Source: Octopus sinensis
Lineage: Eukaryota
Assembly: GCF_006345805.1 (NCBI RefSeq)
Contig: NW_021833943.1
Span: 1-52,878 of the forward strand
Direction of reading: 5' to 3'
DNA length: 52,878 bases
Positions 7,462 through 48,772 of this stretch are shown one piece after another (positions within the stretch are counted from its first letter, which is position 1; each line of letters opens with the position of its first letter). The notes under the pieces are model-generated. The model was given only the letters and a program-made list of their open reading frames with translations. It was not told the DNA's origin and did no database searches. The position numbers and the translations under genes were made by a program.

Positions 7462-8615
7462 TGGGATGATTGGAGGCGCAATGGCCCAGTGGTTAGGGCA
7501 GCGGACTCGCGGTCGTAGGATCGCGGTTTCGATTCCCAGATCGGGCGTTGTGAGTGTTTATTGAGCGAAAACACCTAAAAGCTCCACGAGGCTCCGGCAG
7601 GGGATGGTGGTGATCCCTGCTGTACTCTTTCACCACAACTTTCTCTCACTCTTACTTCCTTTTTCTGTTGTACCTGTATTTCAAAGGGCCGGCCTTGTCA
7701 CTCTCTGTGTCACGCTGAATATCCCAGAGAACTACGTTAAGGGTACACGTGTCTGTGGAGTGCTCAGCCACTTACACGTTAATTTCACGAGCAGGCTGTT
7801 CCGTTGATTCGGATCAACCGGAACCCTCGTCGTCGTAACCGACGGAGTGCTTCCATCCATGGGATGATTGGACGTTAATAAAGCAACGTAATTCTTGTCG
7901 AGTAGAATGTGTTTACGCCAAGATATATGGAGCGATTGACCAGCTTCATATTACGAAAATCGAATTGGATGATACAATAATACGCAACAGAAATCTACAA
8001 TGCACTTGGATTATTTACAAGGATTTTTTTTTGCTTCAAACCTGCACAACTGTCTCATCAAAATATGGAAAGTTGGCAAATGTAATGACATGAGAGTAGG
8101 ATGAAGTACATATGTGTTATGACCTTGAAATATCCCAGTTGATATTTGTTGTGTGGACGCCCCCAGACGATGAAGTAGGCAAGCCCAATACGTAGATAGA
8201 GAGGGAGAAGTCTAGACGTCAGAATAACGGAGCAGTAGAACAGAGCGAAGCCGAGTAGAGTATTAGAGGCATCCGAAGTGCGACGTAAAAGTATTTCAGT
8301 GAGAGGGATCACAATTGTGGGGCTCTTGGAAGCTTCAAGGACTATTCACTTGTTTTTCGTGTTCCGAGTTCACTCTCATGTCATTACATTTTCCAACTTT
8401 CCATATTTTGATGAGACAGTTGTGCAGGTTTGAAGCAAAAGAAAAAGAAGATCCTTGTAAATAATCCAAGTGCATTGTAGATTTCTGTTGCGTATTATTG
8501 TATCATCCAATTCGATTTTCGTAATATGAAGCTGGTCAATCGCTCCATGTATCTTGGCGTATACACATTCTACTCGAGAAGAATTACGTTGCTTTATTAA
8601 CGTCCAATCATCCCA
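7462..8615. mobile_element. Fold-back (long-TIR) MITE, about 240-bp arms, interrupted at its left tip by a SINE
   Basis: 7859-8097 is the near-exact reverse complement of 8372-8616; termini TA|TGGGATGATTGG ... CCAATCATCCCA|TA; non-coding spacer of about 270 bp. Confidence 0.9.
7472..7858 (+). mobile_element. tRNA-derived SINE, family A, nested in the fold-back terminus
   Basis: Same head and body as 3817-4200; TSD atgggatgatt(gga) at 7461 and 7859. Confidence 0.93.
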
Positions 8616-8983
8616 TAGTAAATTCAGGGAACAGTTTAGATATTACCAGCAACAAGTGACAGGTTGAAAATCGATGGTTAATCTGCCGGTCTCTTTTGGA
8701 GAGCTTCCCAATAAGTCGTCGAGGAAGATGTTTAGAGTTATTGAAAAACATGTTGAAAATTTATAGTGTCCGACTATACAGTATGTTCAGTGACAGTCTC
8801 CAATAATTTTAGATGTTAGCAATTTATTCGACCGAACATTTAGGTATACACCCACACAGATCTCCAAGAACTAAATTATGATTTTGTAATATTTTATAAT
8901 CGTATAAAACAATATTTTGAAAACTAGATTAAAAATTAGGGGCAGGAATTTTGTTACAGTTAAGTTTAATCGAGAATGTGTTG

Positions 8984-10604: not shown

Positions 10605-11380
10605 GGTATGTATGTTCTAGGCGGCGAGCTGGCAGAAACGTTAGCACGCCGGGCGAAATGCTTTGCGGTATTTCGTCTGCCGTTACGTTCTGAGTTCAAA
10701 TCCCGCCAAGGTCGACTTTGCCTTTCATCCTTTCGGGGTCGATAAATTAAGTACCAGTTACGCACTGGGGTCGATGTAATCGACTTAATACCTATGTCTG
10801 TCCTTGTTTGTCCCCTCTGTGTTTAGCCCCTTGTGGGTAATAAAGAAATAGGTATGTATGTTCTAGGATTTTGGTGATGTACTTACTTGCATGTTTTTCT
10901 TTTGCCATGCCTAAAAGCATCAATCATTTTAGGGATTGTTTCTATCTTTAGGCTCGTTATTGAGGCTATAATTATTTCCAGATATTTGTATTGCGATAGT
11001 TTCTCCATTTCTTTTAGAGATAAACAGTCATTTGTTGAGACTAATATGTTGATTAACAGGCATTTTTACATAGTGGATCTTGACAACAATATCTGGCTGG
11101 TTTACCTTTATCTCCTTATCTGTGTGTATTGGCATATCCCAGAGTATGGTTGCTTTGTAATTTTCCGAAACCTCTTACGGGATGTGTCTATACTATCTGT
11201 GTTCTGTTGGTATTCTGTAAAGCTGGCACAACTTTCAGTGTATGCAAATTCCAACTTTCTTGACCAAGACAAGGCAACCAAAGACAATATGATATATTGG
11301 TTTTCTCCATCTGCAGTTACTTATGGTATTATGCTTCATTATGTGTTTTTAGTGGGCATTTTTGAAGTACCTGGGTTACT
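10605..11380 (-). mobile_element. Second RLE-clade LINE fragment, interrupted by a SINE
   Basis: Minus translation KATILWDMPIHTDKEIKVNQPDIVVK followed by decayed RLE motifs; continues on both sides of the SINE TSD. Confidence 0.8.
10621..10850 (+). mobile_element. SINE family B, one body unit, ending at GAAATA
   Basis: Head (G)GCGGCGAGCTGGCAGAAACG, B box GAGTTCAAATCC; 16-bp TSD ggtatgtatgttctag at 10605-10620 and 10851-10866. Confidence 0.93.
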
Positions 11381-15362: not shown

Positions 15363-17381
15363 ATTTCTGCAATTAATGACTTATGCAGTTGTTTCATCCT
15401 TTTACATTCGTTAAGTCTCACCGCGTTCGACTTTCCCTACTTTTTATCACCCGCCTTTACGGTGCCAGTAATATAAGTAAACGCTAATATAGGCAAACAT
15501 GTTCAATGGTATTTACCATTCTTCCACAAAATACTAGAGTTGTACTAATTTTAGAGATCCTTATATTTAGTTATTGATGTGTGTTAACCATTGTAAACCC
15601 CAAGTTAACTATGCTCCAAAACCTTTCAGTCAGTGACCAATCTTATTTTCAGATATAGTGTATCGGGGTTACATTATCTAATATGTCCTTTGTTCAAGAA
15701 TGTATAGCTTCAGGAACACACGTCCTTGCTGCCATTATGACATGCAATGCAATCTATATGGTGAGCATCATAGAATAGTGGTATATCTATAGTTGAGACC
15801 TTGATTTCGAAACTCACTCCGAATGTATGAATGTCACTATTCCTCATTTAGTGTCTTCTAAAAATGTTATTATCACCCTTTTACATACGAACCGATTATA
15901 ATTGTTGCATTACTTTTCTTATTTGTATCCCATTAAGGTCAGCTTTGATTTTCATCACTGCAGGCTCTACTTAACAAACATCTACTGATGATGCCATCTT
16001 GCTCTTCAGATTAAATCAATTATGGAAAAGAAAGAGAATAACTTAGGAATTATTCTTCTGCTCCAAATTTCAGATGGAACTTGTGTTGGAATACAGTTGT
16101 AGCAGTTACTTTCAGTCTTTTGTCTATCTATTTACCGCTCATTTATTCCAACAATAAGAAGAAGAACATCTGTGTCTGTCAAACGTGACCTAAGACGTGA
16201 CCTAATCCAACATATCAATCATCTGATTACAAATGATTAATGACGTCTGTTGATGCAAGCTTTGCATGGACGTTTATCACCTGTATTTTGTACGCGTCTA
16301 CTTTTGAGAAGAAATGTCATTCATGTACACTTCTTTCTGCCTTGTGCACGCACGTGCGAACGGACGTGCATTTGTGTTAGTAAGTGTGTGTATGTGAGTG
16401 TATGCAAATGTCTATGTGTGTGCTGGATCTCATTCAACGTATCAGTTATCTTTTTCATCATGATTGTAGAAGACTTTCTAATTTCAAAATAAAACAACGT
16501 GTTTGTATGATTGCTTAGGCAAGGGATTACTTCATTTAAAACCTTTTGCAAAACGGTTTTACTTCACACGTTTAAAATAGGTATCTTGTCCTTTAATATC
16601 TCAATGCCAGGCTATTGTAAGAGTGTAAGGGAAACACAGACTGATTGATGAGAAAAGTGCGTTTCCATGCTAAGATACTATTGATTTTTAAAAAAATATT
16701 TCTGCTGGCGATCTTTCTTTTATATGGCTTAACTCTAATCATGCATTCCGTTTGACTATATTATTCCTTATGAACTTCGTTATCATACACTCGATGATAT
16801 GCATCTCGAAAATTTCCAGTAAGTAGCTATGGACAGTGTCATATGCTTTTTTCACTGGTTTGAAGTTGATTCATCTCCAACTTCATTCGACTTGTTATCA
16901 ATAAAGTGTTAAACTTAATAACTCTATGCTCCTTTTCTGTTCGTCATATTGGCTTCTCATTTTATTTTGTATGCTGGTCTTTCGATATTTGCCTATTTCG
17001 GTATTTGTACTTTGTAAGAGGACATATAGTAATTCTCTAAGCATGTTGTCCTTTCTGATCTTGACGTGAATATCATGTCTTTATGTTTGCCTATCGGAGA
17101 TGTTACTAGCCATGATAATTATCATATTGATTATTTTCACAAATCATTAATGTGGAATGAATAGTTACTCGAGCTAAACGTCTTAGAATTTGTAAATCTT
17201 AGAGTACACACTATTTTCGGTTGGCCAGTGTAATCAACATTACTAAATATTCTTGGTTTTCATTTGTGGCCATTATATTTTAGATATGTTTGGTTTCATC
17301 TTCTCTCCCTATGATTCTTTGGCTATTTTTTAAACTTCATTATTAAATCTCAGAACGAGATGTAAACAGTAATCGCTCGAC

Positions 17382-17770
17382 AATGTAAAGTATAATAGCC
17401 ATCTCAATATGGCTAACCACAAAGGGGGGTGTTATTGTAGCTTTTTAGCTCCAGGAGATCATCGTCCCCAGCTGGAAATCAGTGGCAGAAGTCACTAGAA
17501 AAACTCTTATATATTTGCATACAGGCCTTTTCTTTCATCGTGATCCGGTGATTACCGCCCGTTGATAAGAGGCAATAACCTCGAAACCGCGGTCCGGTGC
17601 GTATCACTTAGGCTTACGAGAAAGGGATGGCCTCCCTTTGCAAATACCATAAGAGCCCAGATAGTGTGCCTAAAGCCAGCTGGAGACGATGATCTCCTGG
17701 GGCTAAAAAGCTACAGTAACACCCACCCTTAGTGGTTAGTCATATTGAGATGGGTATTATTCTTTACATT
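17382..17770 (+). mobile_element. Fold-back element (94-95-bp inverted arms) whose interior also pairs into a rod
   Basis: 17382-17475 is the reverse complement of 17676-17770; nested inner helices 17504-10/17649-55, 17512-19/17639-46, 17523-36/17620-33 and 17538-43/17614-19. Confidence 0.88.
17548..17607 (+). ncRNA. Type I hammerhead ribozyme, U3-A8 core variant
   Basis: Stem I GTGATTACCGCCCG/CGGTGCGTATCAC (bulged); core TTGATAA 17562-68; stem II GAGG-CAATAA-CCTC; GAAA 17583-86; palindromic stem III ACCGCGGT; GUC site with predicted cut between 17594 and 17595. Confidence 0.8.
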
Positions 17771-18843
17771 TTTAAACTTCGTGCTTTTCAAAAACGTTCA
17801 CAATTTGTTTTTCATCTGGATTTTGTATGTTTTACACCTATTGTTTATTCTTTCCTGCATTCGTAACAATTGCTTAAATTTTCAGGAATTTATGATTATT
17901 TAAGAATTTCTATAGTAACTAGGTTCTTACGAATATTTTGAGAATGTCGATTGTATTTTTTAATGGAAGAAAGAACCTTTCATTTAGGGTTGCTCTGTTT
18001 TCTTTTTATTGATTTATAATGCCGTTGGGTGTTTTATCAGATCGTTTCATCTTCATATATAGATATATAAATATATAGACACAATCACACACACACGTAC
18101 GTGCATATACAAACACATAAACGAGGGATTAAACTAATCGTGAGTTCATCTGTACTTCAAATACAGTCAATTCTCGACGCTTTCTCTTTAATGTTGTCGT
18201 GTTTTAATGTTTACAGTAACAGATGGTTAATGATTATTCAGATAATTTGCTTTTGTCTAGAATTCCTTGATCGATGCTTATATTTTCCAAGATATAACGA
18301 ATGTACTTCGTAATCGAGCATATTTTAATATTGTTTAAAATTAGACATATATCAGCCCTCAAAAGAAAGCCAAATTAATTTCATTCAGTTTCATCAATAT
18401 CGAGAATATAAACTTACTATTGAGAATCAACAACAATAATGAGAAGAATATTTTAATTAAAAATTAATCATAATGGAATGTTTAAGCGTTTTTATCTTCT
18501 TTTTCATTTGATAATGGTATCATACCTAATTACGAATATTATTATGTCAAATGTGATATCCAATTAGATAATGTAGTACCAGATTCTAACGGCATCTCAT
18601 CTCATAATAACCAGGCCTTTTATTGCTCCTCAGTTCAAAACAGAACAGACAGATCATTATGGAAACGAATGCTAGTCGGGTACTTCTCAAAACTAAATCC
18701 CCCCCACCCCTACACCCCCACATAAACACGCACGCACGCACACACATACAACGCGTGCGCACGTGGAGTGCTGTTTTTGTATATAGTATTTTTTCCATAA
18801 AACCCACCCCATTAGAGTGCATTATTATTATTATTATTATTAT

Positions 18844-21275
18844 TTAAAACTTTTTATGTGCAGCTTTGTTACAGTCACTTGCCGAGACACACCCAGTGCC
18901 CTGGGGCCGATGAAGGATAAGAGATGCTACAATATGACTGAAAGCTTGGGGAGGTAGTGAAATATCTTGTAATACAACACAGACATATAAATTGATAGGG
19001 TTTTTATAAGGTTGTGGGCAACACAATCTTTTGAATTTTTCTGAGACATAGTTTTGGGATCTTATCTAGATGTTTCTGACATACCCTTTTTTATATCTTA
19101 CCTAGGGCTCCTACAATAACAAGAACAGTTCTCGTTTTAAGATGCCAGATCTTTTGTATTTCAATTTCCAGGTCCTTAGATTTACTTAGTTTGTCAAATT
19201 CTTTGGCAGATATATTTTTTATCAGTGGGAACACTTACATCTATTAGTGTACAAGTATTCTCTTCCGTGTCTTTAATAATTATATCTGGTATATATTCCT
19301 GGATCGTTCTGTCAGTATTGATTGATTGAAAAATCCCAGAGGATAGTGACATTTTTACCTTCAACGACTGGATCAGGATAATGTTCGTACTAGTAAGCCG
19401 GAGTACTAATTTTGTAGTGTTTACATATTTTCAAATGTAAATAGTGTCTTACTCTATCGTGGCGATTTTTATATTCGTTTAGTGTCAGCACAGGACATCC
19501 GGAGACGAGATGGTTTATTGTTTCGTCAAATGTGTCGTAGAATCTGCATTTAGGGTCAGAACCTGGTACTTAGCCTGGAAGTTTTTGTGTAAGCAAGCTT
19601 TGGTCTTATGCCCCCAGTATGAAACCTTCAGTCTCTGCTTTCAGCCCGGAACATATCAGTCACTGATGGGTTGTTTGATCTACATCAGCAATTTGATATC
19701 GAAGTATATACTGTCTATACAGAGGCTTCTGGCTCCATCGCTCCTCAATTCATTTCTGCCCATTATTTTTTGCAGTCTGCTTGATCCATTTTGCTTGTTT
19801 TGTGGCAGTGGTTTCAGGTTCTTCAACTATTTCAGGGTTAATGCCAAGTTCCCTTTCGAATTTGCAAGCTTCGTTGAGAATCGAATGGGAATATTGCTGC
19901 TTTCGTGTTTGCACACAAGTTGCAGCGTCCAGTCTTCTGTACTAAATAAATACTTGTTCATTGTTATTGTGAAGGTCTTGTAGCACAGTTCTATCTCCAT
20001 TATTCCTCCTCCCCCATTACTTCTAGGTAGGTACAGACGATCAACATCTGCTTTTGGGTGATGCATGTACTTAGAAGTTAGTACTTTTCTTGTCTTCCTG
20101 TCCAGACATTGGAGCTCTGTAAGATTCCAGTTAATGATGTTAAAACTATATTGGACTACTGGAAGTGTCAGGGTGTTAATGGCTTCGATGCGATTTTCAG
20201 AGCTGAGTTCAGTTTTTAGTATGAGTCTTATTCTATTGTAATATTCTTTTCTTATTTTTCCCTTCATACTAGCATGTTGTATACCATCTCCTTCGTTTAT
20301 CCACAGGTATTTGTAATTTTCTTGTGGGTCAAGCTCCTTGATGGTAGTGTCGGTATCTAATTTAATGGAAGCTGTTTGCTTGTGCTTGCCACTTACAAAA
20401 GTTGCTTTAGCACACTTATCAAGGCCAAAGTTCATCCTGATGTCATTACTGAATTCTTTAACAGTTGTTAGTAGCCCTACTAGTTCTTCGTCAATTCTTG
20501 CAAACAGCTTCAGGTCGTCCATATAAAACAGATGGTTTATTGTCGTATTGTAAACTTTGAGTCCATACCTGGTGTTATTTAGTTCGTTTGAGAGTGGGAT
20601 CAGTGCCATGCAGAAGAGTAATGGGGAGATGGAGTCATCTTGAAAAATGCCTTGTTTGATGTTGATGTTGTTAGTTTGGCTCATCTCATTACTATGGTTT
20701 AGGAGACGTGTGTCCCACTTGGCCATGCTACATTGTAAGAATTTGGAGCTGGCAGGAGAGATCTTATATATTTCAAAATCCTGGAGTATCCTGTTATGTG
20801 GGACGTTATCAAACACTTTCCTGTAGTCTATGCATGCCATACCCAGGTTTTTCTTTTTACTCCGGTAATTCTCTACAATAATTTTACTTATGGATAGTTG
20901 ATCTTTGTACCCATAAGAATTCCGTTTACAGCTTTTTTGAGCTGGTGAAAGGATAGATCTCTATTCAAGGAAAGAGTATATTCTATCAGTTAATATGGAT
21001 GTAAGGATCTTGTAGGTGGTGTTGAGACATGTTATTGGTGAGTATTTCTTTGGAGTTTTCGTGTCTTCAGTTTTTGGTAGAAAGTATGTTGTTCCTTCAG
21101 TCAGTCAGGCAGGTATTAGCTCTGAAATTCTGGATGACATCAGTCAGAGATGCAGCTAAATTTTGGTGTACTTCTGTCAGACAATTTAGCCAGAAGTAAG
21201 GAATTCGGTCCAGTCGTGGAGTTTTCCATTTGTGAGACTTCCTAAGAACGCATCTTAGCTCTTGTGTTCCTGTTG
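18844..21275 (-). mobile_element. 5'-truncated RLE-clade non-LTR retrotransposon (R4/Dong-like): RT, CCHC and RLE domains; pseudogenised
   Basis: ORF 19827-20840: IDYRKVFDNVPH, IKQGIFQDDSISPLLF, HLFYMDDLKLF; downstream CRF...HLVSGC...RHD knuckle and LWDF...PDIIIKD...LIDVSVP...IVGALG; 3' end runs into (TAA)n at 18821-18843. Confidence 0.92.
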
Positions 21276-22445: not shown

Positions 22446-22833
22446 CTCTAGGCACAAGGCCCGAAATTTTTGGGGACGGGACCAGTCGATTGGATCGAAC
22501 TCAGTACGCAGCTGGTACTCAAATTATGAACCCCAAAAAGATGAAAGGCAAAGTCGACCTTGGCGAAATTTGAACTCAGAACATAAAAACAAACGAAATA
22601 CCTATTTCTTTACTACCCACAAGGGGCTAAACACAGAGGGGACAAACAAGGACAGACAAACGGATTAAGTCGATTATATCGACCCCAGTGCGTAACTGGT
22701 ACTTATTTAATCGACCCCGAAAAGGTGAAAGGTAAAGTCGACCTCGGTGGAATTTGAACTCAGAATGCAGCGGCGGACGAAATACCGCTAAGCATTTCGC
22801 CCGGCGTGGTAACGATTCTGCCAGATCGCCGCC
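22446..22833 (-). mobile_element. SINE family B, two body units plus terminal tail
   Basis: Reverse complement of head at 22813-22835; duplicated body joined at GAAATAG|GTATTTC. Confidence 0.9.
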
Positions 22834-22930
22834 TTAAGGTCGAGGTTCAATTACTGAAACAAGTGCAAGACAAATGCCTCGCCGACACAACTTAAAATGG
22901 TTCTTGTGATGTAGAAGATGGTGATGAGAA

Positions 22931-23702: not shown

Positions 23703-23734
23703 GTTTATATATATATATAATATATATATATATA

Positions 23735-23778
<44 letters not shown>

Positions 23779-23881
23779 TATATGTGTGTGTGTATGTATA
23801 TATCTATCTATATCTATATATATATATATAATATATATATATATGTATATATATATTATATATATATATATATTATATATA

Positions 23882-23920
<39 letters not shown>

Positions 23921-24322
23921 GTGTGTGTGTGTGTGTGTGTGTATGTGCGTGTGTGTGTGTGAATGTATACATATGTGCGTTCGCTCGCACGCATATAAAA
24001 TATTTACATAGAAGTATATATAGGTAAAAGCAGAGACATTGTGTATTAGAGTAAGTATAAAAAAGCGAAAGTCTGATGCGAACATATATTGAGGATGCAA
24101 CCATACAAACGTCGAACTTAAACATTTCCCGAAGTTATGTGTAGGATTTTACGTGTCAAGTCTCATAACATACTTGAGAAACATTTACATCATTTAAAAC
24201 ATCGGATACGCATTGAAGGAACATATCATGATGGTATCAAAATCACACATCACACATCAGAAACGTTAAGTTAATGGAAATTTTCAGAAAGTGGTACGTG
24301 GTACTCAATAAGGTTTCTAAAG

Positions 24323-24358
<36 letters not shown>

Positions 24359-24438
24359 GACATGTATGTGTGTGCGTGCATGTGTGTGCATGTATGTGTT
24401 TGCATACATGAATCGATGTGTGTTTATGAATATATATA

Positions 24439-24529
<91 letters not shown>

Positions 24530-24686
24530 TATGCATACACACACACATATATATAGATAAATATGTATATATATATATATATTATATTATATATATATTT
24601 ATATACATACATATATATATATATATGCATACACACACACACACACATATATATATAGACATATAAACATATATATATATATTTAT

Positions 24687-24737
<51 letters not shown>
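23703..24737. repeat. Clusters of (TA)n/(TG)n/(CA)n microsatellites
   Basis: Main tracts at about 23703-23965 and 24326-24737, with unique sequence between. Confidence 0.9.
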
Positions 24738-24738
<1 letters not shown>

Positions 24739-24998: not shown

Positions 24999-26085
24999 AC
25001 GTCCGGGGAAATGGAAAGTCGGGCTAGGATACGTGCAGTGGGCCGTGAAGGTATCAATGTTGCTAGATGGGTTCGTTCGGTAGAAACCCAACAGGGATTC
25101 GGTGCTACGATTGTGTCTTTGGTAGATGGGTTCGGACAAGAGATCCAAGGAGAGGAGGAGATATGCAAGGCCTTTCACAAGCACTTTGCCGCGCTGTTCG
25201 AGAGGGACAGGGCGTTGGACAATGAGGATGCCTTACGGCGTTTTCTGGCCGACGGCCCGTGTCTTTCGGCTCGTGATGCTGAGCGCTGTGAAGGATCAAT
25301 TACAGCCAAAGAGATCAGAGAGGTACTGTCTGAGTGCCCCGGGGACAAGTCGCCAGGTATGGATGGTCTTCCTTATGAATTTTATAGTAGCATGCCAGAC
25401 TTGTTTGGGAAAGTACTGGCCAGTGTGTACACGAATTGGCAGCAGAATGGGAGGATTCCTAAAGCTGTGAGCCGAGGAGTGGTGACACTGATCAGAAAGG
25501 ACCCGAGCAAGGGGGATAACGTCAATAATTTTAAGCCCATAACTCTGTTAAACAAAAGTTAAAGATTTTGGCCAAGGTGCTTGCGAAGAGAGTTAGAGTT
25601 GTCGTGGGCGACCTGGTGGGAGAAGCACAGGCATGTGCCATCCCAGGAAGGACGATACAGGACAACCTTCACCTCGTTCGCTACACCACAGAGCAGGTGG
25701 GTAAAATACATGGCAACGGTTGGGCACAGGTGAATTTAGACCAGTCTAAGGCATTCGATAGGGTTGACCACGAGCATCTGGACAAAGGGCCCGGTTAAAA
25801 TGTTCGGGGTCTGGTTTGGACCGGACCTCCAGGCGGAGAAGAACTGGAGGGAGGTGACGAGCAAGATGACAGCCATAGTCAGAAGTGATCTGGGAGGAAG
25901 TTATCCTTGTTGGGAAGGGCGGAGGTTGCATAGGTGTTCATAGTGTTTGTGATAACCTACCGTCTAACTGTCGTGCCTTGCCCCGGTTTGTGGCTGACCA
26001 AGTTGGAGCGGATCCTTTTCCACATTTTTGTGGGGAAGTTAAACTCCACTTGTGAGGCGATTTATCTGTTGCCAGAAATACTCCT
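24999..26085 (+). mobile_element. Tx1/L1-clade LINE ORF2 fragment with a large internal deletion
   Basis: KSPGMDGLPYEFY, GVVTLIRK, NFKPITLLN, KILAKVLAKR, QACAIPGRTIQDN, LDQSKAFDRVDH; jumps at about 25780 to post-RT GPVKMFGVWFG...KNW, so the YADD region is missing. Confidence 0.9.
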
Positions 26086-26092
26086 CTCTACT

Positions 26093-26294
26093 ATAGGCAC
26101 AACGCCTGAAATTTTGTGGGAGGGGGCTAGTCGATTACATCGATCTTAGTGCTCGACTAGTACTCATTTTATCGACCCCTAAAGGATGAGAGGCAAAGTC
26201 GACCTCGGCGGAATTTGAACTCAGAGCGTACAGACGGACGAAATGCCGCTAAGTACTATGCCCGACACGCTAACGATTCAGCCAGCTCTCCGCC
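26093..26294 (-). mobile_element. SINE family B, single unit with terminal tail
   Basis: Reverse complement of head, body and GGCCTTGTGCC-type tail. Confidence 0.85.
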
Positions 26295-28696
26295 TTGATG
26301 TAAGTTGTAATTATAAAGTCAAACCAAATAGTGATATTTCGAAATCATTTAATACCTGCATTTTAACTCTACGTAATATATTAATAGGAAATGCATCCAT
26401 TACGTAAGACCTTCTTCAGTTAAAACATTTCAAACCTGAAACACGCGTATTAAATGATTTCAAAATATCACTGTTTGGTTTGACTTTACTTTTATCACGC
26501 ACCCATACATATATGCATAAATTAGAAATCTACTCTCTATGACAATCTCAGAGTAGAAAGGCATGTTACATTGTATCGAATTTCTCAACGATATCCGTGA
26601 ATAAAGTCTACCGCCTTAGTATTAGTTTTCAGCCACTGTCACTAATAAACGTACAACGATAATATATACATTCGATGTCGAGGTCAGTAAAGGGCAAGTT
26701 TTAGGTCAATCTCAACTCTACTTCATCAATAACGGATGTCCTTTATTATTTATAATATTTTATTAAAAAATTACCTCAAGTGAATAGATAAGAATACGTA
26801 CGTAAATATTTTATTCGCATGCATATCCAGTCATGCGTAGATGTATGAATTCATGACTGCATAGTATGTCACATAAGGTTAGAGATGGGAAGATAGTGAT
26901 AACTAAATGTGTATATTAACAATTAAATGCATCCACTGCAATGGTCACGCACTAATGTTGTGTATTAAGGCTTAACATATGCATATATACAGGAGTATGT
27001 CTCTGCATTTGCGAAGTCTCATAAATGTTTTATTTTCTATCTGTTTTATAGTAACATATGCAGTCATAAGTGTGTATATGTATATATGTGTGTGCATGTG
27101 TGCATGTGTGTTTGTGTGTGTGTGCAAATGTGTGTGTCTATCTTGCACATATGTGTTTGCAGCTGCATCTGTGAGTAGTGCAGATGAATGTTTATAGCTG
27201 CTAAGCAAGCCGGGAGTGTGTCGACTAAAGTGTAGAAAAATTGTATTTTCTTGCTAGTCAAGTCATTTAAACCTCCCTGGTCTTTTAAACCCTCTCCCAT
27301 AATATTATATATATATATATATATATTATATAATGAAATTATTGTATACAGTGCTCAGGTGCACCACAACTGGTCCAGATAGAAATGTAGTTTTGTATTT
27401 GCGTTTATGCGTGCGTGCGCGTGTATATGTGTGTTTGTGTGTGTGTGTGTGTGAGTTTGTGTGTGTGTGTGAGTTTGTGTGTGTGTGTGTGAGTATCTGT
27501 GTTTGTGTGTGCGTGTGTGTGTTCATAGGCAGCTGTGTTTATAGGCAACTATATAATTACACCTATGACATAGTGAAACAGATATTCCAAGAACAATTAA
27601 CTTACATCATATTCATGTTATAAGCAAGATGAAGGTCGTATTTCTTCATCCGTCTTGTCGTTATTTTGCCCTTTAAACTTGCGTGGAACTAATGTGTGAA
27701 ATTGCAGCTGAGTTTAATGACGTTGACTTTGTTGATGAACTCGATTCATTCCTAGCACCAATTCATAAAGACAGCTACTTCTCTGATCGTAATCTGAATA
27801 ATTTTGTCCTACACGATCGATTGGAGTGAAATTGTCCATCGCTTCCCGGCTATCACTTTTCTTATTCGAAAAACTGGCTCCTTTGAATAAAATCCTTTGA
27901 ATAAACCTAGTTGAATAAACCTAGTTGGAGATATATGGTTGCGCAATGCAGTTTCTTAGATCTCACTACAGAACCACATCTCCAAATACAACAAAACCTA
28001 TTCAAGCAAGGAAAAAATACCGTTGGTTATGTCGCCAATCACTTCATGTTGGGAAAGCCTAATAAAATAGAGGTTAGTAGCTCCCAATATGAATGTAACA
28101 TTAACCTCAGCATCAAAACTATTTGCCTCTCCCATAGAAAGGGAAATAGTTTTGATTGTGCGGTTAATGTTATATAATACTCATATGAATTATATATAAT
28201 ACATACAAAACGTCATCCATAGACGCGTAAAAGTTAGAATCGATCAACATTATAGCTACCCCACAACACACACACATACACAGACACTTATAGACAGACA
28301 CACAACATGACACATATACCACGGCACTTAAAAGGTGTTACATCCACTACTGAAGTAGCTTATGGTTTTGAAAAGTTGATTTAATATAAAACTCTTGGGA
28401 GAAAACAGATCCGTCAAGTCTATCATAACCTTACTATTTTTATTAAAATATATGTAGAAAAGATTGGTGTAATAAACCCAAATAATCTGTAAGAGAACGA
28501 ACCATATAAGGTACTTGTGCCATATAAGGTGCTTGGACAGATCTCACTCACTTTTAACAGAAACTTATATAGCAGTGTAGAAATTTGTGAATGCTCCACA
28601 TAAGAATATAGTCCTGCTCTTCGGTTAAATAACCCATCAACAGAGAAAGGAAATAAAAAGACATCGAATCAGAGTGAGAGGAAGAGAGAGTGATGC

Positions 28697-32929: not shown

Positions 32930-33088
32930 ATGCTTAGCGGTATTTTGTAAGTTTTACGTTTTGTGTTCGAATTCTGCTGAGGTCGATTTTGATTTTCATC
33001 CTTTCGGGGGTCGATAAAATAAATATTGGGGTTAATGTAATCGACTCATCCCCACCTCTCCCAAAATTGCTGCCCTCGTGGAAAAATT
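32930..33088 (+). mobile_element. 5'-truncated, diverged SINE family B with terminal tail
   Basis: tgcttagcggtatt...ttcatcctttcggggg tcgataaaa...aaattgctgccctcgtg. Confidence 0.75.
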
Positions 33089-33091
33089 TAA

Positions 33092-33688
33092 GGCGGCTAT
33101 CTGGCAGAAACGTTAGCACGCCAGGCGAAATGCTTTGCAGTATTTCATCTGCCGTTACGTTGTGAGTTCAAATTCCGCCGAGGTCGACTTTGCCTTTCAT
33201 CCTTTCGGGGTCGATAAATTAAGTACCAGTTACACACTAGGTCGATACAATCGACTTAATCCGTTTGTCTGTCCTTGTTTGTCCCCTCTGTGTTTAGCCC
33301 CTTGTGGGTAGTAAAGAAATAGGTATTTCATCTGTCGTTACGTTGTGAGTTCAAATTCCGCCGAGGTTGACTTTGTCTTTCATCCTTTCGGGGTCGATAA
33401 ATTAAGTACCAGTTACACACTAGGTCGATACAATCGACTTAATCCGTTTGTCTGTCCTTGTTTGTCCCCTCTGTGTTTAGCCCCTTGTGGGTAGTAAAGA
33501 AATAGGTATTTCATCTGTCGTTACGTTGTGAGTTCAAATTCCGCCGAGGTCGACTTTGCCTTTCATCCTTTCGGGGTCGATAAATTAAGTACCAGTTACA
33601 TACTAGGTCCATACAATCGACTTAATCCGTCTGTCTGTCCTAGTTTGTCCCCTCTGTGTTTAGCCCCTTGTGGGTTGTAAAGAAATAG
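33092..33688 (+). mobile_element. SINE family B carrying three tandem 183-bp body units
   Basis: GTATTTC unit starts at 33140, 33323 and 33506; third unit ends at GAAATAG 33688. Confidence 0.93.
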
Positions 33689-34071
33689 GTTATGCTAACG
33701 TTGCTTGTGGTACTTAAAAATTCTTGTGAATTGAATTGGTGATAATTGCGCTGCTACTAAGAATCTTTTCTACTTCATGTAGTAAATGTTAGCGGTGATG
33801 ATGATGGTAGTGATGCAAGTAGAGAATGAGAAGTTTTATCTGTTGTTTAGTCCAAGTTAGTCCTCATCGAGTATTAGTCCTCATCTTTTCCCTTTGTGCA
33901 GAGAATCTAGGGTAGATTATCCAATGTGTCCATTTCTAAGAAGTGGATTCAGATTTGAGGGCGATTTATTTAGGTAATTCTCGCAAATAGAAGTAACCTT
34001 GTGGTTACTTCCTGTATATCGTTAACTTGGGTTATGGTTGTGTGCACTGGTATATTATTATTATTATTATC

Positions 34072-34448
34072 AATTTTGGCACAAGGCCAGCAATTTCGAG
34101 GAGAAGGTAAGTCGATTACGTCGACTCCAGTACTTATTTTATCGATCCCAGAAGGATGAAAGGCAAAGTCGACTTCGGCAGAATTTGAACTCAGAACGCG
34201 AAGACGGGCGATATACCAATTTCTTTACTACCCACAAGGGGCTAAACACAGAGAGGACAAACAAGGACAGACAAACGGATTAAGTCGATTATATCGACCC
34301 CAGTGCGTAACTGGTACTTATTTTATCGACCCCGAAAGGATGAAAGGCAAAGTCGACCTTGGCGGAATTTGAACTCAGAAAGTAACAGCAGACGAAATAC
34401 CGCAAAGCATTTCGTCCGGCGTGCTAACGTTTTTGCCAACACACCACC
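34072..34448 (-). mobile_element. SINE family B, two units
   Basis: Reverse complement of head, body, second body and tail. Confidence 0.88.
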
Positions 34449-34492
34449 TTGCCACTATGTTAGAAATTATTAATAATAATATATTAGTGCAA

Positions 34493-34889
34493 GGCGGCGA
34501 GCTGGCAGAATCGTTAGCGCGTCGGGCGAAATGCTTTGTGGTATTTCGTCTGCCGTTACGTTCTGAGTTCAAATTCCGCCGAGGTCGACTTTGCCTTTCA
34601 TCCTTTCGGGGTCGATTAAATAAGTACCAATTACGCACTGGGATCGATATAATCGACTTAATACCTATGTATGTCCTTGTTTGTCCCCTCTATGTTTAGC
34701 CCCTTGTGGGTAATAAAGAAATAGGTATTTCGTCTGTCTTCGCGTTCTGAATTCAAATTCCGCCGAGGTCGACTTTGCCTTTCATCCCTTTCGGGGGACG
34801 ATAAAAAGTAAGTACCAGTTAAGCCCTGGGGTCGATGCAATTGACTTACCCCCTCCCCGAAATTGCTGGCCTTGTGTCAAAATTTGAAA
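34493..34889 (+). mobile_element. SINE family B, two units plus tail
   Basis: GGCGGCGAGCTGGCAGAATCG ... GAAATAG|GTATTTC ... AAATTGCTGGCCTTGTG. Confidence 0.92.
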
Positions 34890-35450: not shown

Positions 35451-35837
35451 AGCGGTGAGCTGGCAGAATCGTTAGCACGCGGGCGAAATGCGTAGCCGTA
35501 TTTCGTCTGCCGTTACGTTCTGAGTTCAAATTCCGCCGAGGTCGACTTTGCCTTTCATCTTTTCGGGGTCGATAAATTAAGTACCAGTTACGCACTGGGG
35601 TCGATATAATAGACTTAATCCGCCTGTCTGTCCTAGTTTGTACCTCTATGTTTAGCCCCTTGTGGGTAGTAAATAGGTATAATAGAAATAGGTATTTCGC
35701 TCGTCGCTACGTCCTGAGTTCAAATTCCGCCGAGGTCGACTTTGTCGATAACGAAAGTACCATTGAAACACTGAAACCGATATAATCGACTAGTTCCCTC
35801 CCCTCAAATTTCGGGCTCTGTGCCTTTAGTAGAAAGG
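35451..35837 (+). mobile_element. SINE family B, two units (second deleted), running into (ATT)n
   Basis: Homology to other copies; tail GAAAGG followed by (ATT)n. Confidence 0.88.
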
Positions 35838-35894
<57 letters not shown>

Positions 35895-35913
35895 ATCATC
35901 ATCATCATCATCA

Positions 35914-36011
<98 letters not shown>

Positions 36012-36017
36012 TATTAT

Positions 36018-36049
<32 letters not shown>

Positions 36050-36076
36050 TATTTTATTATTATTATTATTATTATT

Positions 36077-36152
<76 letters not shown>

Positions 36153-36163
36153 CATTATCATCA

Positions 36164-36196
<33 letters not shown>

Positions 36197-36213
36197 CATC
36201 ATCATCATCATCA

Positions 36214-36277
<64 letters not shown>

Positions 36278-36280
36278 CAT
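35838..36280. repeat. (ATT)n/(ATC)n compound microsatellite, probably an expanded SINE tail
   Basis: Direct reading; abuts the SINE 3' end. Confidence 0.95.
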
Positions 36281-36696
36281 TTCATATCACTATTTTGCTT
36301 GTTGTTTTCCATTTTTACTCTTTACCACACTCGACGGTAACTCCCCACACCCGTCTGTCGTATTTAAGGCGACATATTAAGGAACATTATTAATATTATT
36401 TATCATTGCAGTTTGGGGTATTGTGGGGGGTGGGTTGCGGGTAGCGAATTGATGTGAATGATGACGACAATGGTGACCGTAAACCACATTAGTTCTGGAC
36501 GTCTGGGACTGAGTCGGAATATCTGATTTCCATTTCTTCCTTCTAACAGCAAATACTATACAGAATGTTGTTGGACTTGGACAGCTTACCCGTTACTAGG
36601 AAACGGGTATCATTATCTGTACGTGTGTGCACATGTGTGTGCGTGTGTGCGCGCGAGTATGGGTTGGTTGTGTGAATGCGTGCGTTTGTGTGTGTT

Positions 36697-43094: not shown

Positions 43095-43734
43095 GAAAGC
43101 AAGGGAGATAAAGGGAGAGTAATGTCAAAGATAATGAGGAAAAAACATGAAAATGTAGAACAAGTACGGTGTAAGCTAGTATTGAAATAGTGATAAGGTT
43201 TACAAATTGTTTTTAAACGAAAATACATGTATAAGAAATAGGTATGAAAAATTAAACGAAGGAAAAAAACAATCAAAGAATTTTACACATGAAAATAATT
43301 ATATAACGGTGAATGGAAGGAGAAAAATACAACGTCAAAATGGATTTCTTTTGATGAGATCTTCCGCCGATACTTCTAAGGGGAGGTAATGCAGTTAGTG
43401 AATTTAACACCAATGCATCACTTATTTGTTGCTGAAATCCATCCAAATGATAACTTACAAAAAAAAAAAAAAAAAAACCAAAAGAATTAGTGGCAAAGTC
43501 GAGTCTAGCAAATAATGACAATCTTAAAGTGATATATTTATATCATTGTTTTCCCCCCGTTTCCGTAGTCACTTCCCTTTCCTATCTGTTTTCTCTGTTT
43601 TTTTCCCCAGTTTTATTAGATTTTTCTCTCTCCTCTTTGCATTCCTTTTCTTCTTTTTTTTTTTATTTTCTCGCGATCTTCCTTTTCCTTCATAATTCCT
43701 TTTGCATTTCTCTCCATCATCCTTATTTTCTAGC

Positions 43735-44100
43735 TTCTTCTTCTTCTTCTTCTTCTTCTTTTTCTTCTTCTTCTTCTTCTTCTTCTTCTTCTTCTTCTCT
43801 TCTTCTTCTTCTTCTTCTTCTTCTTCTTCTTCTCCTTGTTCTTCTCCTTGTTCTTGTTCTTGTTCTTGTTCTTGTTCTTCTTGTTCTTCCTCATCATCTT
43901 CTTCTTCTTCTTCTTCTCCTTCTCCTTTTTCTTGTTCTTGTTCTTGTTCTTGTTCTTCTTGTTCTTCCTCATCTTCTTCTTCTTCTTCTCCTTCTCCTTC
44001 TCCTTTTTCTTGTTCTTGTTCTTGTTCTTCTTGTTCTTCTTCTTCCTCACCATCTTCTTCTTCTTTTCTTCTTCTTCTTCTTCTTCTTCTTCTTCTTCTT

Positions 44101-44148
<48 letters not shown>

Positions 44149-44170
44149 TACTACTGCTACTGCTGCTACT
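43735..44170. repeat. (TTC)n/(TTG TTC)n/(CTA)n compound microsatellite with higher-order blocks
   Basis: Direct reading; a block of about 65 bp recurs roughly three times. Confidence 0.95.
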
Positions 44171-45097
44171 ACCGCCATACACACTCTCTCTGTTTACCAA
44201 GCTCCGTCTCTATTGATTGCTAGTATCTATTTACCAACTCATTAGTCAATCTATTTGCTAGTGAATATGTTTACCAAGTGTATTCTTTAGTGAATTGATG
44301 TCACACTAAACAAAAGCCTTCTCAAAAGTCGAGTGTCATAGTAGTATTAGTTTAGCGTATGTAGCTTTTGATATAATGATAACTATTGAATTTATATATT
44401 CTGTTAGCATGCTGGAAAATTCTAGAAGTTTTTCAAAAAGCCTGTCTGCATAAAATATTTCATCTGCAACAGCAACACGTATTTGTATGTATAAATAATC
44501 ATATCATATATATAGCCTTCTGTTTAGCATGATAGGCGCGAGAGAGAACATCACTATTGAGTCATTCGATATCCATAATGATATCTAATCTCACAGAGAT
44601 CTCAGAGTTGTGAATGGGTCTAGCACCTTAAACACAAAGGCTAGAACATAGTCATAGAGTAAAGGAATGTTGGATTTAAAAATATTCAATTGTCAGAGGA
44701 GGACAAACGTTAACTGGGTGATGTACTGTAAAGAGGTTGAGTTCACAAATCGGTTTTAGAAGAGCTAAATCGTATACAATGATTGATGAACAACGTTGGA
44801 ACAGAAACTAGTTCAGGAACTGACTGAGTCATATACACATGTGGTTACTGAAGATATGAAATTTCGACGAAGAAAGTGGGCAAGTCGGATTTCGTTTCCA
44901 GTTGGAGATATTCGCTTTAGTAATGCTCTAGGAAAAAAGTACCATTACCGTCTTGAAAACATTTTTGTTCTTATCATCTTACATAAATAAGATGATTAAC
45001 ATACATTTCAGATGATACTAAGTGCTGTGCATAGATGTGTGTTTATTTAAATATTAAAATTTACACAAGTTGTTTCTATAATGGAATGCTGAATATA

Positions 45098-46269: not shown

Positions 46270-46407
46270 TTGCTGTTTTTTAACCTCTAGGTTAGCTTGA
46301 AGGTGTTTTAGCAATGACCGTTCTCTATCAGAGAGTACATACTCTCTGATAGAGAATGGTCGTTGCTAAAACACCTTCAAGCTCACCTAGAGGTTAAAAA
46401 ACAGCAA
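46270..46407. repeat. Near-perfect 138-bp palindrome (68-bp arms, 2-nt centre)
   Basis: Three differences between arms; internal TTAA|CCTCTAGG ... CCTAGAGG|TTAA. Confidence 0.95.
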
Positions 46408-48230: not shown

Positions 48231-48741
48231 TATATATATATATATATGTACACACACACACACATACACACACACACACACACACTTACATGCATGCATA
48301 CATACATATAGACAGACATACTCACATACGCACACACACATACATACATACATAATACATACATACATACATAACATGCATCCATACATACATACATACA
48401 TACACACATACATACATACATACATACACACATACATACATAAATACATACATACATACATACATACATACATACATACACCACATACATACATAAATAC
48501 ATACATACATACATACATCATACATACATACATACACCACACACATACATACATACACACACACACAACATACATAAATACAAACATACATACATACATG
48601 CATACATACATACATACATACATACATACACACACCACACATCATACCACACACACACACAACACACACAACACTTACACATGCATGCATACATACATAT
48701 CGACAAACATACTCACATACGCACACACACACACACACACA

Positions 48742-48772
<31 letters not shown>
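48231..48772. repeat. (CATA)n/(CA)n compound microsatellite
   Basis: Direct reading. Confidence 0.95.

What the first reader, a model, noticed from the sequence alone, without database searches (positions are those of the whole stretch)
17382..17770. Rod-shaped fold-back element with an apparently intact hammerhead ribozyme at its tip
Seen in sequence: outer 94-95-bp inverted arms, four further nested helices, then a bulged stem I leading into a complete type I hammerhead (TTGATAA / GAGG-CAATAA-CCTC / GAAA / ACCGCGGT / C). Most of the 389 nt folds as one viroid-like rod. Established: C3 and G8 form a tertiary Watson-Crick pair that tolerates U3-A8; short palindromic stem III is typical of type I hammerheads that work as dimers (newt satellite, Penelope-like elements, metazoan retrozymes). 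Inference: having both halves of the U3/A8 swap plus an intact GUC site suggests selection for cleavage. Retrozymes known to me are tandem or LTR-like direct repeats; an inverted-repeat, MITE-like carrier may be undescribed, but I cannot check the literature.
Basis: partly seen in the sequence, partly recalled or inferred. Interest (0 to 1): 0.9.

Follow-up and report, generated by a model that had tools for sequence, protein, structure and literature searches.

The report
Solitary hammerhead-ribozyme retroelement copy, hairpin-shaped
This is a single, probably dead copy of a small non-coding mobile element that carries a hammerhead self-cleaving RNA motif, a kind already known from animal genomes (retrozymes and Penelope-like elements), here with an unusually long hairpin shape; it is not a new class of carrier.

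Summary
Window 17382-17770 is a 389-nt fold-back. Its outer 94-nt arms are about 92% complementary, and the inner 200 nt form a rod of their own. A complete type I hammerhead (HHR) sits at the tip, 17544-17617, + strand. It matches Rfam Hammerhead_HH9 at 35.2 bits, below the gathering score of 52, with E = 3e-5 for the whole window. The core is canonical except for the paired change U3/A8. Helix III is the perfect palindrome ACCGCGGU, and the cleavage site is 17594/17595.

The U3-A8 covariant, the short palindromic helix III that works in dimers, inverted-repeat insertions with a 30-40-bp tail, and dispersed monomers are all already described for Penelope-like elements (PLEs) and animal non-LTR retrozymes. 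A 12-nt direct repeat (TTTTTAAACTTC) flanks 17339-17768. That leaves 43 nt between the left repeat and the left arm, which fits a retroelement insertion and does not fit a MITE. Folding models give the monomer's catalytic fold about 0.5% probability. A register-shifted alternative is preferred, while a two-copy (double) hammerhead is about as stable as two misfolded monomers. Only one copy lies in the window, and none could be retrieved elsewhere, so selection on the core cannot be tested.

Verdict: a new member of a known kind, of modest interest.

The parts
17327..17338 (.). Left copy of the 12-nt direct repeat TTTTTAAACTTC (putative target-site duplication)
   Evidence: family D1. In an empirical test over the window, a 12-mer placed like this occurs at 0.17-0.5% of positions.
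17339..17381 (+). 43-nt 'tail' between the left repeat and the left arm. It contains a small hairpin, AUCUC-AGAAC-GAGAU.
   Evidence: Sequence. Folded alone it gives -4.4 kcal/mol, and it caps the rod when 17339-17768 is folded as a circle. Its length is comparable with the 30-40-bp tail of PLE insertions.
17382..17475 (+). Left outer arm of the fold-back
17476..17543 (+). Left strand of the inner rod (helical segments below stem I)
17544..17617 (+). Type I hammerhead motif, U3/A8 core variant. Core 17562-17568, stem II 17569-17582, GAA 17583-17585, palindromic helix III 17586-17593, C17 at 17594, predicted cleavage 17594/17595.
   Evidence: Rfam HH9 at 35.2 bits, E = 3.2e-7 local and 3.1e-5 for the whole window
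17618..17675 (+). Right strand of the inner rod
17676..17768 (+). Right outer arm. The fold-back as first described runs to 17770, but its last two T belong to the right copy of the direct repeat.
17769..17780 (.). Right copy of the 12-nt direct repeat TTTTTAAACTTC

Best explanation
A solitary, non-coding, hammerhead-bearing retroelement insertion spans 17339-17768 (430 nt, 44% G+C). It is a monomer of an animal non-LTR retrozyme or Penelope-like pLTR-derived family.

Inferred life cycle of the family, taken from the literature and not shown here:
1. Master copies in tandem are transcribed.
2. Two hammerheads pair through the palindromic helix III ACCGCGGU into a double hammerhead and cut after GUC.
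3. Unit-length RNA is ligated into a highly self-paired circle.
4. That RNA is copied into DNA by a Penelope-like reverse transcriptase/endonuclease and inserted with a target-site duplication.

This copy has one ribozyme and no tandem partner. It cannot release a unit and is most likely an inert relic. If it is transcribed on the + strand, the monomer mostly sits in a register-shifted 'off' fold.

The 94-nt near-perfect arms have two possible origins that I cannot separate:
(A) The PLE insertion signature. This is an inverted 5'-truncated copy of the element's 3' end (17382-17475) with its optional 43-nt tail, joined head-to-head to a 293-nt unit (17476-17768) that holds the inner rod and the ribozyme.
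(B) A unit-length cDNA of a 430-nt rod-shaped circular RNA. Its two tips would be hammerhead loop II and the tail hairpin.

Shown here: the anatomy, the hammerhead match, the flanking repeat and the folding energies. Inferred: retrotransposition, the PLE partner, and dimeric cleavage.
For: - Hammerhead of canonical animal type I design, E = 3e-5 in the window.
- Helix III is a perfect 8-nt palindrome. The double-hammerhead dimer scores -46.1 kcal/mol, against -44.2 for two misfolded monomers. Dimer-type HHRs with helix III of 1-2 bp and a palindromic loop are the norm in animal retrozymes and PLEs (PMC4209133; PMC7229834).
- The U3-A8 core covariant is already found in PLE hammerheads.
- A 12-nt direct repeat flanks 17339-17768, with background 0.2-0.5%. 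Retrozyme target duplications are described as larger than 4 bp.
- The size and composition, 389-430 nt and 44% G+C, fit retrozymes: mussel repeats are 350-390 bp and G+C is below 45-50%.
- The inner 200 nt are a significant rod by themselves, and the + strand folds better than the - strand. There are nine G:U pairs on the + strand. My hand count from the alignment finds about two helix positions where the transition instead gives an A.C mismatch. This fits an RNA-level constraint on the ribozyme strand.
- Complementarity drops sharply from about 92% to 60-75% at 17475/17476 and 17675/17676. The arm differences are 4 transitions, 3 transversions and 1 indel. That looks like neutral decay of a once-perfect DNA-level inverted duplication.
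- PLE insertions often have an inverted 5'-truncated copy and a 30-40-bp tail at one end only. A PLE enzyme cleaves and extends both DNA strands and starts reverse transcription at two adjacent internal sites, which produces the tail.
- Dispersed retrozyme monomers are documented.
- There is no ORF over 56 aa in the element.
Against: - Only one copy could be examined. There is no second copy or tandem partner in the 52.9-kb window and none in any searchable collection. So family membership, the consensus and the link to a PLE are untested.
- No PLE reverse transcriptase or GIY-YIG gene was seen among the ORFs of 110 aa or more in the window. The nearby RT ORF (19827-20840, - strand) matches only the general RVT_1 family, and its named relatives are uncharacterised proteins. 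I read it as LINE-like from its motifs.
- The Rfam score is below the gathering threshold (35.2 against 52).
- The 12-nt repeat could still be chance (0.2-0.5%).
- The tail is 43-45 nt, slightly longer than the published 30-40 bp.
I did not measure those.
Confidence: 0.6

Rival explanations
1. A MITE or fold-back DNA transposon moved by a cut-and-paste transposase, which happens to carry, or has captured, a hammerhead at its centre.
For: - The inverted repeats are long and about 92% complementary.
- The same window holds other palindromic or fold-back elements without a ribozyme: 7859-8616 (arms at least 178 nt, 97% complementary) and about 46271-46406. Fold-back repeats are therefore common in this genome.
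Against: - The bases directly flanking the arms (…GCTCGAC | … | TTTTTAAAC…) share no duplication.
It lies 43 nt outside the left arm, so the inverted repeats are not terminal.
- The inner 200 nt are an RNA-like rod that folds better on the ribozyme strand.
- Every animal type I hammerhead carrier described in the papers I read is a retroelement.
Confidence: 0.12
2. A host-recruited element. The hairpin and/or ribozyme would now serve the host, for example as an intronic self-cleaving motif like the amniote HH9/HH10, or as a long double-stranded RNA source for editing or small RNAs.
For: - The best Rfam match is to HH9, the family built on conserved intronic hammerheads.
- The core is intact.
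- A 94-bp stem would be a substrate for enzymes that act on double-stranded RNA. This is my inference, not a result.
Against: - No orthologous sequence was available to test conservation.
- The arms have decayed by about 8% with transversions and an indel, as expected for neutral DNA.
- The monomeric catalytic fold has a predicted probability of about 0.5%.
- No gene context was identified in the window.
Confidence: 0.08
3. A chance look-alike: the tip of an ordinary palindromic repeat that happens to resemble a hammerhead.
For: - The Rfam score is below the gathering threshold.
- Stems I and II come for free in any hairpin.
- Two core positions are non-consensus.
Against: - E = 3e-5 over the whole window.
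- All other core residues are canonical, along with the G10.1-C11.1 pair, the A15.1-U16.1 pair and the GUC site.
- The UUACC and GUA loop residues and the A-rich 6-nt loop II are matched.
- The two deviations are exactly the known covarying pair.
- The other fold-backs in the window give no hammerhead hit.
Confidence: 0.05

Closest known systems
Animal non-LTR retrozymes (Cervera & de la Pena 2020, PMC7229834), e.g. the 350-390-bp repeats of the mussel Mytilus galloprovincialis
   Same: - Canonical type I hammerhead.
- Non-coding unit of a few hundred nt with low G+C (44% here).
- Highly self-paired RNA.
- Target duplication longer than 4 bp.
- Dimer-type short helix III.
- In some mussel circles the ribozyme is also predicted to be blocked by an alternative fold.
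   Different: - The copy here is single, not a tandem array, so no unit can be excised.
- Its outer 94 nt are paired far more perfectly than the inner rod.
- Its core is U3/A8.
- Circular RNA was not tested.
Penelope-like element insertions and their pLTR hammerheads (PMC4209133, PMC8557442, PMC11167929)
   Same: - Hammerhead in the terminal non-coding part.
- U3-A8 natural covariant.
- Palindromic helix III.
- Insertions with an adjacent inverted 5'-truncated copy that forms inverted repeats.
- An extra 30-40-bp tail at one end only.
   Different: - There is no RT/GIY-YIG ORF here or nearby.
- The ribozyme is of the canonical kind, with loop-loop contacts, not the 'minimal' kind typical of autonomous PLEs.
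- Homology to a PLE pLTR could not be tested.
Newt/salamander satellite 2 and Schistosoma Sm-alpha hammerheads; Rfam Hammerhead_HH9 (RF02275)
   Same: Same ribozyme architecture. The stem I internal loop (UUAC / UA) and the A-rich loop II align with the HH9 consensus. Dimer-dependent cleavage is expected, as reported for newt and axolotl motifs.
   Different: Those sit in tandem satellites, SINE-like repeats or conserved introns. The score here is below the HH9 gathering threshold.
Viroids and viroid-like circular RNAs with hammerheads
   Same: A rod-like fold of 250-450 nt, and a ribozyme that is kept inactive in the monomer and active in multimers.
   Different: This element is encoded in chromosomal DNA and flanked by a target duplication. 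It has one polarity of ribozyme only. There is no evidence of RNA-RNA replication.

Membership tests
Hammerhead ribozyme, type I (Rfam clan CL00010 / HH9 RF02275) | Conserved core: C3 U4 G5 A6 N7 G8 A9, G12 A13 A14, A15.1-U16.1, H17 | tested here: met
   UUGAUAA … GAA … A-U … C17. Only positions 3 and 8 differ, and they differ as the known covarying pair U3-A8 (PMC4209133).
Hammerhead ribozyme, type I (Rfam clan CL00010 / HH9 RF02275) | Three helices around the core with the open end at helix I | tested here: met
   Helix I is 6 bp (one bulged U) plus 5 bp. Helix II is 4 bp with a 6-nt loop. Helix III is 2-3 bp within the palindrome ACCGCGGU.
Hammerhead ribozyme, type I (Rfam clan CL00010 / HH9 RF02275) | Score at or above the curated Rfam gathering threshold | tested here: not met
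   35.2 bits against 52. The E-value is still 3.1e-5 for the window.
Hammerhead ribozyme, type I (Rfam clan CL00010 / HH9 RF02275) | The catalytic fold is thermodynamically accessible | tested here: inconclusive
   In the monomer the HHR register has probability of about 0.005. It is 8.0 kcal/mol worse than the alternative locally and 5.6 kcal/mol worse in the full element. The double hammerhead scores -46.1 against -44.2 for two alternative monomers. Tertiary contacts are not modelled.
Hammerhead ribozyme, type I (Rfam clan CL00010 / HH9 RF02275) | Self-cleavage after H17 | not testable with these tools
   Needs in vitro transcription of monomer and dimer constructs.
Animal non-LTR retrozyme | Tandem repeats, so that two ribozymes flank a unit | tested here: not met
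   One copy only in 52.9 kb. It therefore counts at most as a 'monomer derivative' in the sense of the 2026 preprint.
Animal non-LTR retrozyme | Short non-coding unit (about 170-400 bp, up to 972), low G+C, highly self-paired RNA | tested here: met
   389-430 nt and 44% G+C. 76-79% of nucleotides are paired, z = -23.6. No ORF exceeds 56 aa.
Animal non-LTR retrozyme | Target-site duplication longer than 4 bp, when present | tested here: met
   12-nt TTTTTAAACTTC at 17327-17338 and 17769-17780, with background 0.2-0.5%.
Animal non-LTR retrozyme | Expressed as linear and circular unit-length RNA | not testable with these tools
   No transcriptome data available.
Penelope-like element insertion (autonomous or mobilised in trans) | ORF with a telomerase-like RT and a GIY-YIG endonuclease | tested here: not met
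   None in the element. Among window ORFs of 110 aa or more, the only Pfam hit is RVT_1, on an ORF I read as LINE-like. At best the element is non-autonomous or a 5'-truncated remnant.
Penelope-like element insertion (autonomous or mobilised in trans) | Adjacent inverted 5'-truncated copy, plus a 30-40-bp tail at one end | tested here: inconclusive
   The 94-nt inverted arm with a sharp boundary, and the 43-nt extra segment on the left side only, fit this pattern. One copy cannot prove it.
Penelope-like element insertion (autonomous or mobilised in trans) | Sequence homology to the pLTR of a PLE in the same genome | not testable with these tools
   No repeat library or source genome was available.
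MITE / fold-back DNA transposon | Inverted repeats at the very ends, directly flanked by a short fixed-length duplication | tested here: not met
   There is no duplication next to the arms. The 12-nt repeat lies 43 nt outside the left arm.

The most novel reading that the evidence does not exclude
The 430-nt insertion could be a faithful unit-length copy of a hairpin-shaped retrozyme family. In that family every unit would carry both 94-nt arms, so the circular RNA would be a near-perfect double-stranded rod. A canonical, tertiary-stabilised U3-A8 hammerhead would cap one end and the tail hairpin the other. The family would spread as single units rather than tandem arrays. That would be a fold-back variant of retrozymes, and its RNA would be an obvious substrate for editing and small-RNA pathways.
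Probability: 0.15. Interest if true: 0.55.

Novelty: new member of a known kind. Interest (0 to 1): 0.3.

Why it matters
It adds one more animal genome locus to the known link between type I hammerheads and Penelope-like or retrozyme retroelements. It also shows the U3-A8 core covariant in a ribozyme of canonical design, with the loop-loop contact residues, not only in the 'minimal' PLE motifs where it was first reported. If the whole family proved to be hairpin-shaped and to spread as single units, it would widen the known forms of retrozymes and bear on how their RNAs meet double-stranded-RNA pathways. As a single decayed copy it changes nothing fundamental.

Tried and rejected
1. Finding further copies:
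- BLASTN of the element against the window found only the element itself.
- A protein search with the element's longest open frame, hoping for spurious ORF calls on other copies, found no candidate.
- A hammerhead pattern scan of metagenome contigs gave one hit in a G+C-rich bacterial contig (L001). It had no Rfam hit and no repeat, so it is a chance match.
- A 25-mer shared by both arms was absent from genome contigs and viral contigs. The U3/A8 hammerhead pattern was absent from viral contigs.

2. Identifying the source genome:
- The exact RT ORF is not on record.
- Its best relatives are only 66-71% identical and sit on unnamed ENA contigs. Those loci hold no copy of the element.
- Sequence strings of the SINE-like repeat and of the ribozyme were not found in the paper library.
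- My recollection that the microsatellite load and the SINE-like repeat look cephalopod is unverified.

4. The tail as a terminal redundancy (a more-than-unit cDNA): by eye it shows no convincing similarity to the last 43 nt of the insertion. It shows only a weak resemblance (about 12 of 14) to the terminal ATTATTCTTTACAT.

5. LINE/SINE-type mobilisation: there is no poly(A) or simple-repeat 3' end, and no similarity to the neighbouring LINE.

6. ARAGORN finds no tRNA-like gene in the window.

Full report
WHAT IS THERE. Window 17382-17770 is a 389-nt fold-back. The repeat finder gives two abutting inverted-repeat segments, 17382-17429/17723-17770 and 17421-17475/17676-17730, at 90-91% complementarity. 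They form one 94-nt arm interrupted by a 1-nt indel. In the alignment of the left half with the reverse complement of the right half, 73 of the first 80 columns match. Identity then falls abruptly at 17475/17476 and 17675/17676 to 60-75%, with indels. As RNA the + strand folds to -230.3 kcal/mol (z = -23.6) and the - strand to -216.5. The inner 200 nt alone (17476-17675) are still a significant rod: z = -6.9 on the + strand and -4.8 on the - strand. So the rod is not only a by-product of the outer arms. The dyad axis runs through 17573-17578.

THE RIBOZYME. At Rfam's gathering thresholds nothing in the window is reported. With E-value reporting, Hammerhead_HH9 (RF02275) matches 17544-17617 on the + strand over the whole model. 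The score is 35.2 bits against a gathering score of 52. E = 3.2e-7 locally and 3.1e-5 for the whole window. It is the only hammerhead hit there; everything else is microsatellite noise on miRNA models.

Read directly from the sequence:
- Helix I is 6 bp with one bulged U, then an internal loop (UUAC / UA), then 5 bp.
- The core is UUGAUAA (17562-17568).
- Helix II is GAGG-CAAUAA-CCUC.
- GAA follows.
- Helix III is ACCGCGGU, a perfect palindrome.
- G10.1-C11.1, A15.1-U16.1 and the GUC triplet are all canonical.
- The UUACC and GUA residues and the A-rich loop II line up with the HH9 consensus.
- Only positions 3 and 8 deviate, together, as U3/A8.

Cervera & de la Pena (PMC4209133) describe the canonical animal type I hammerhead in the same terms. 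Helix I is 6 bp, helix II is 4 bp, and helix III is 1-2 bp capped by a small palindromic loop. It is inactive as a monomer and active as a dimer. The same paper reports U3-A8 as a natural covariation in Penelope-like element (PLE) hammerheads, with about 1,300 hits in Schistosoma mansoni, mostly single motifs.

DOES IT FOLD AS A RIBOZYME? Nearest-neighbour models ignore the loop-loop tertiary contacts. Under them the monomer does not fold this way:
- For 17544-17617 the minimum-energy fold (-22.1 kcal/mol) shifts the stem I register (UACCG/CGGUG) and pairs CCGU, which includes U3, with GCGG of helix III. The hammerhead fold scores -14.1.
- In the full element, enforcing the hammerhead costs 5.6 kcal/mol: -224.7 against -230.3.
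- The hammerhead register has pairing probability of about 0.005, against 0.9-0.99 for the alternative.
- A domain-swapped double hammerhead, with an 8-bp intermolecular helix III, scores -46.1 kcal/mol. Two alternative-fold monomers score -44.2.

This is the behaviour expected of dimer-type hammerheads, which are off in monomers and on in multimeric transcripts. It does not refute the motif. It does mean that a lone copy is unlikely to cleave efficiently.

BOUNDARIES. A 12-nt direct repeat, TTTTTAAACTTC, lies at 17327-17338 and 17769-17780. I slid a 389-nt pseudo-element along the window and asked for the same configuration: a 12-mer starting within a few bases of the right end and recurring within 100 nt upstream of the left end. 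This happens at 0.5% of positions, or 0.17% when low-complexity flanks are excluded. I therefore take it as a target-site duplication that brackets an insertion of 430 nt (17339-17768, 44% G+C). The right arm abuts the repeat. The left arm is separated from it by 43 nt (17339-17381), which contain their own small hairpin. The bases directly next to the two arms share no duplication. The inverted repeats are thus not terminal, which is the defining requirement of a MITE, and in my recollection 12 bp is longer than the duplications of cut-and-paste families.

WHAT IT MOST LIKELY IS. It is a solitary insertion of a hammerhead-bearing, non-coding retroelement: a monomer of an animal non-LTR retrozyme or PLE-pLTR-derived family. 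The fits are as follows:
- The ribozyme type fits.
- The unit size and G+C fit (mussel repeats are 350-390 bp, with G+C below 45-50%).
- A 'highly self-paired' RNA fits.
- A duplication longer than 4 bp fits (PMC7229834).
- The existence of dispersed monomers next to tandem arrays fits (bioRxiv 10.64898/2026.07.22.740005).

That preprint and the 2020 paper both point to PLEs as the mobilising partner. The inverted arrangement is not foreign to this world. PLE insertions often have an inverted 5'-truncated copy immediately adjacent, which forms inverted repeats. They also often have a 30-40-bp tail at only one end (PMC8557442). A purified PLE enzyme cleaves and extends both target strands and starts reverse transcription at two adjacent internal sites, which accounts for the tail (PMC11167929).

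TWO SUB-READINGS.

Reading A: the insertion is tail (43 nt), then an inverted 94-nt copy of the element's 3' end, then a 293-nt unit (inner rod with the ribozyme plus the 3' end). In its favour:
- The boundary of high complementarity is sharp.
- The arm differences are 4 transitions (3 giving G:U, 1 giving A.C), 3 transversions and 1 indel. This looks like neutral decay of a once-perfect DNA duplication.
- The inner helices are rich in G:U on the + strand. Nine G:U pairs are predicted in all. My hand count finds about two helix positions that give A.C instead.
- The tail is present at one end only.

Reading B: the 430 nt are a unit-length cDNA of a circular rod RNA. The arms would stack directly on the inner rod, and the tail would form the far hairpin cap (circular fold -226.9 kcal/mol, 76% paired). 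In its favour:
- The arms begin exactly at the base of the inner rod.
- The insertion ends exactly at the far tip of the rod.

One sequence cannot decide between them.

ON 'SELECTION FOR CLEAVAGE'. The arms differ by about 8%, or roughly 4% per copy if both were identical at insertion. At that level a 13-nt core is expected to have taken about 0.5 substitutions, so an intact core is unremarkable. Two independent transitions that create exactly U3 and A8 after insertion would be improbable (on the order of 1e-3 by my estimate). The pair was therefore most likely inherited from a family in which it was selected. That agrees with the literature, but it is an inference about the family, not about this locus.

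CONTEXT.
- The window is 32-40% G+C by 2-kb window, very rich in microsatellites, and clearly from an animal.
- It holds an RT ORF at 19827-20840 on the - strand. Pfam matches it only to RVT_1, and I read it as LINE-like from its motifs. Its best relatives are only 66-71% identical.
- No Penelope-like reverse transcriptase was seen among its longer ORFs.
- Other fold-backs without any hammerhead occur in the same window: 7859-8616, about 46271-46406, and an inverted SINE-like pair at 34147-34794. Hairpin-shaped repeats are thus common here, which modestly raises the MITE rival. I still put that rival at about 0.12 because of the offset 12-nt duplication.

LIMITS. I could not obtain a second copy from any collection. 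The source genome is not represented in the protein collection. Family consensus, covariation, the PLE homology test, expression and cleavage therefore all remain open. The steps that would settle them are listed separately.

VERDICT. The ribozyme call is right. The 'undescribed MITE-like carrier' reading is not supported. This is a new member, possibly a structurally extreme one, of a known kind. Interest 0.3.

Noticed in passing
window 7859-8616: A second, unrelated fold-back element. The arms are at least 178 nt and 97% complementary. By eye they extend to about 240 nt, around a unique centre of about 270 nt. There is no hammerhead hit and no obvious flanking duplication.
   Followed up: partly
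window 46271-46406: A near-perfect palindrome of about 136 nt. It scores about 55 bits on both strands against the plant miRNA model MIR9486, well below the gathering score of 100. It is probably a small hairpin repeat or MITE.
   Followed up: partly
window 33140-33690, with related copies at 10616-10855, 22503-22837, 26129-26317, 33088-33241, 34130-34795 and 35480-35644: A 183-bp unit in three tandem copies (97% matches), plus dispersed copies in both orientations. These include a head-to-head pair with 306-nt arms (34147-34452 / 34489-34794). It looks like a SINE-type repeat, but ARAGORN finds no tRNA-like gene. My impression that it resembles a cephalopod SINE is unverified.
   Followed up: partly
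window 19827-20840 (- strand): A 337-aa ORF with an RVT_1 reverse-transcriptase domain, which I read as LINE-like. The best database relatives are only 66-71% identical, on unnamed ENA eukaryotic contigs. DNA similarity to those loci spans window 19065-21107.
   Followed up: yes
window 25011-25562 (+ strand): A 183-aa ORF whose sequence looks like the N-terminal part of a LINE reverse transcriptase (…GMDGLPYEFY…, …KPITLLN…). It has no Pfam hit.
   Followed up: partly
whole window, e.g. 567-717, 1195-1422, 23706-24738, 35838-36281, 43734-44172, 48249-48771: The density of microsatellites is very high (TCTA, CA, TA, ATT, CTT, TACA). They produce dozens of sub-threshold false matches to miRNA families (mir-297, mir-3149 and others) in the permissive Rfam scan.
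   Followed up: no
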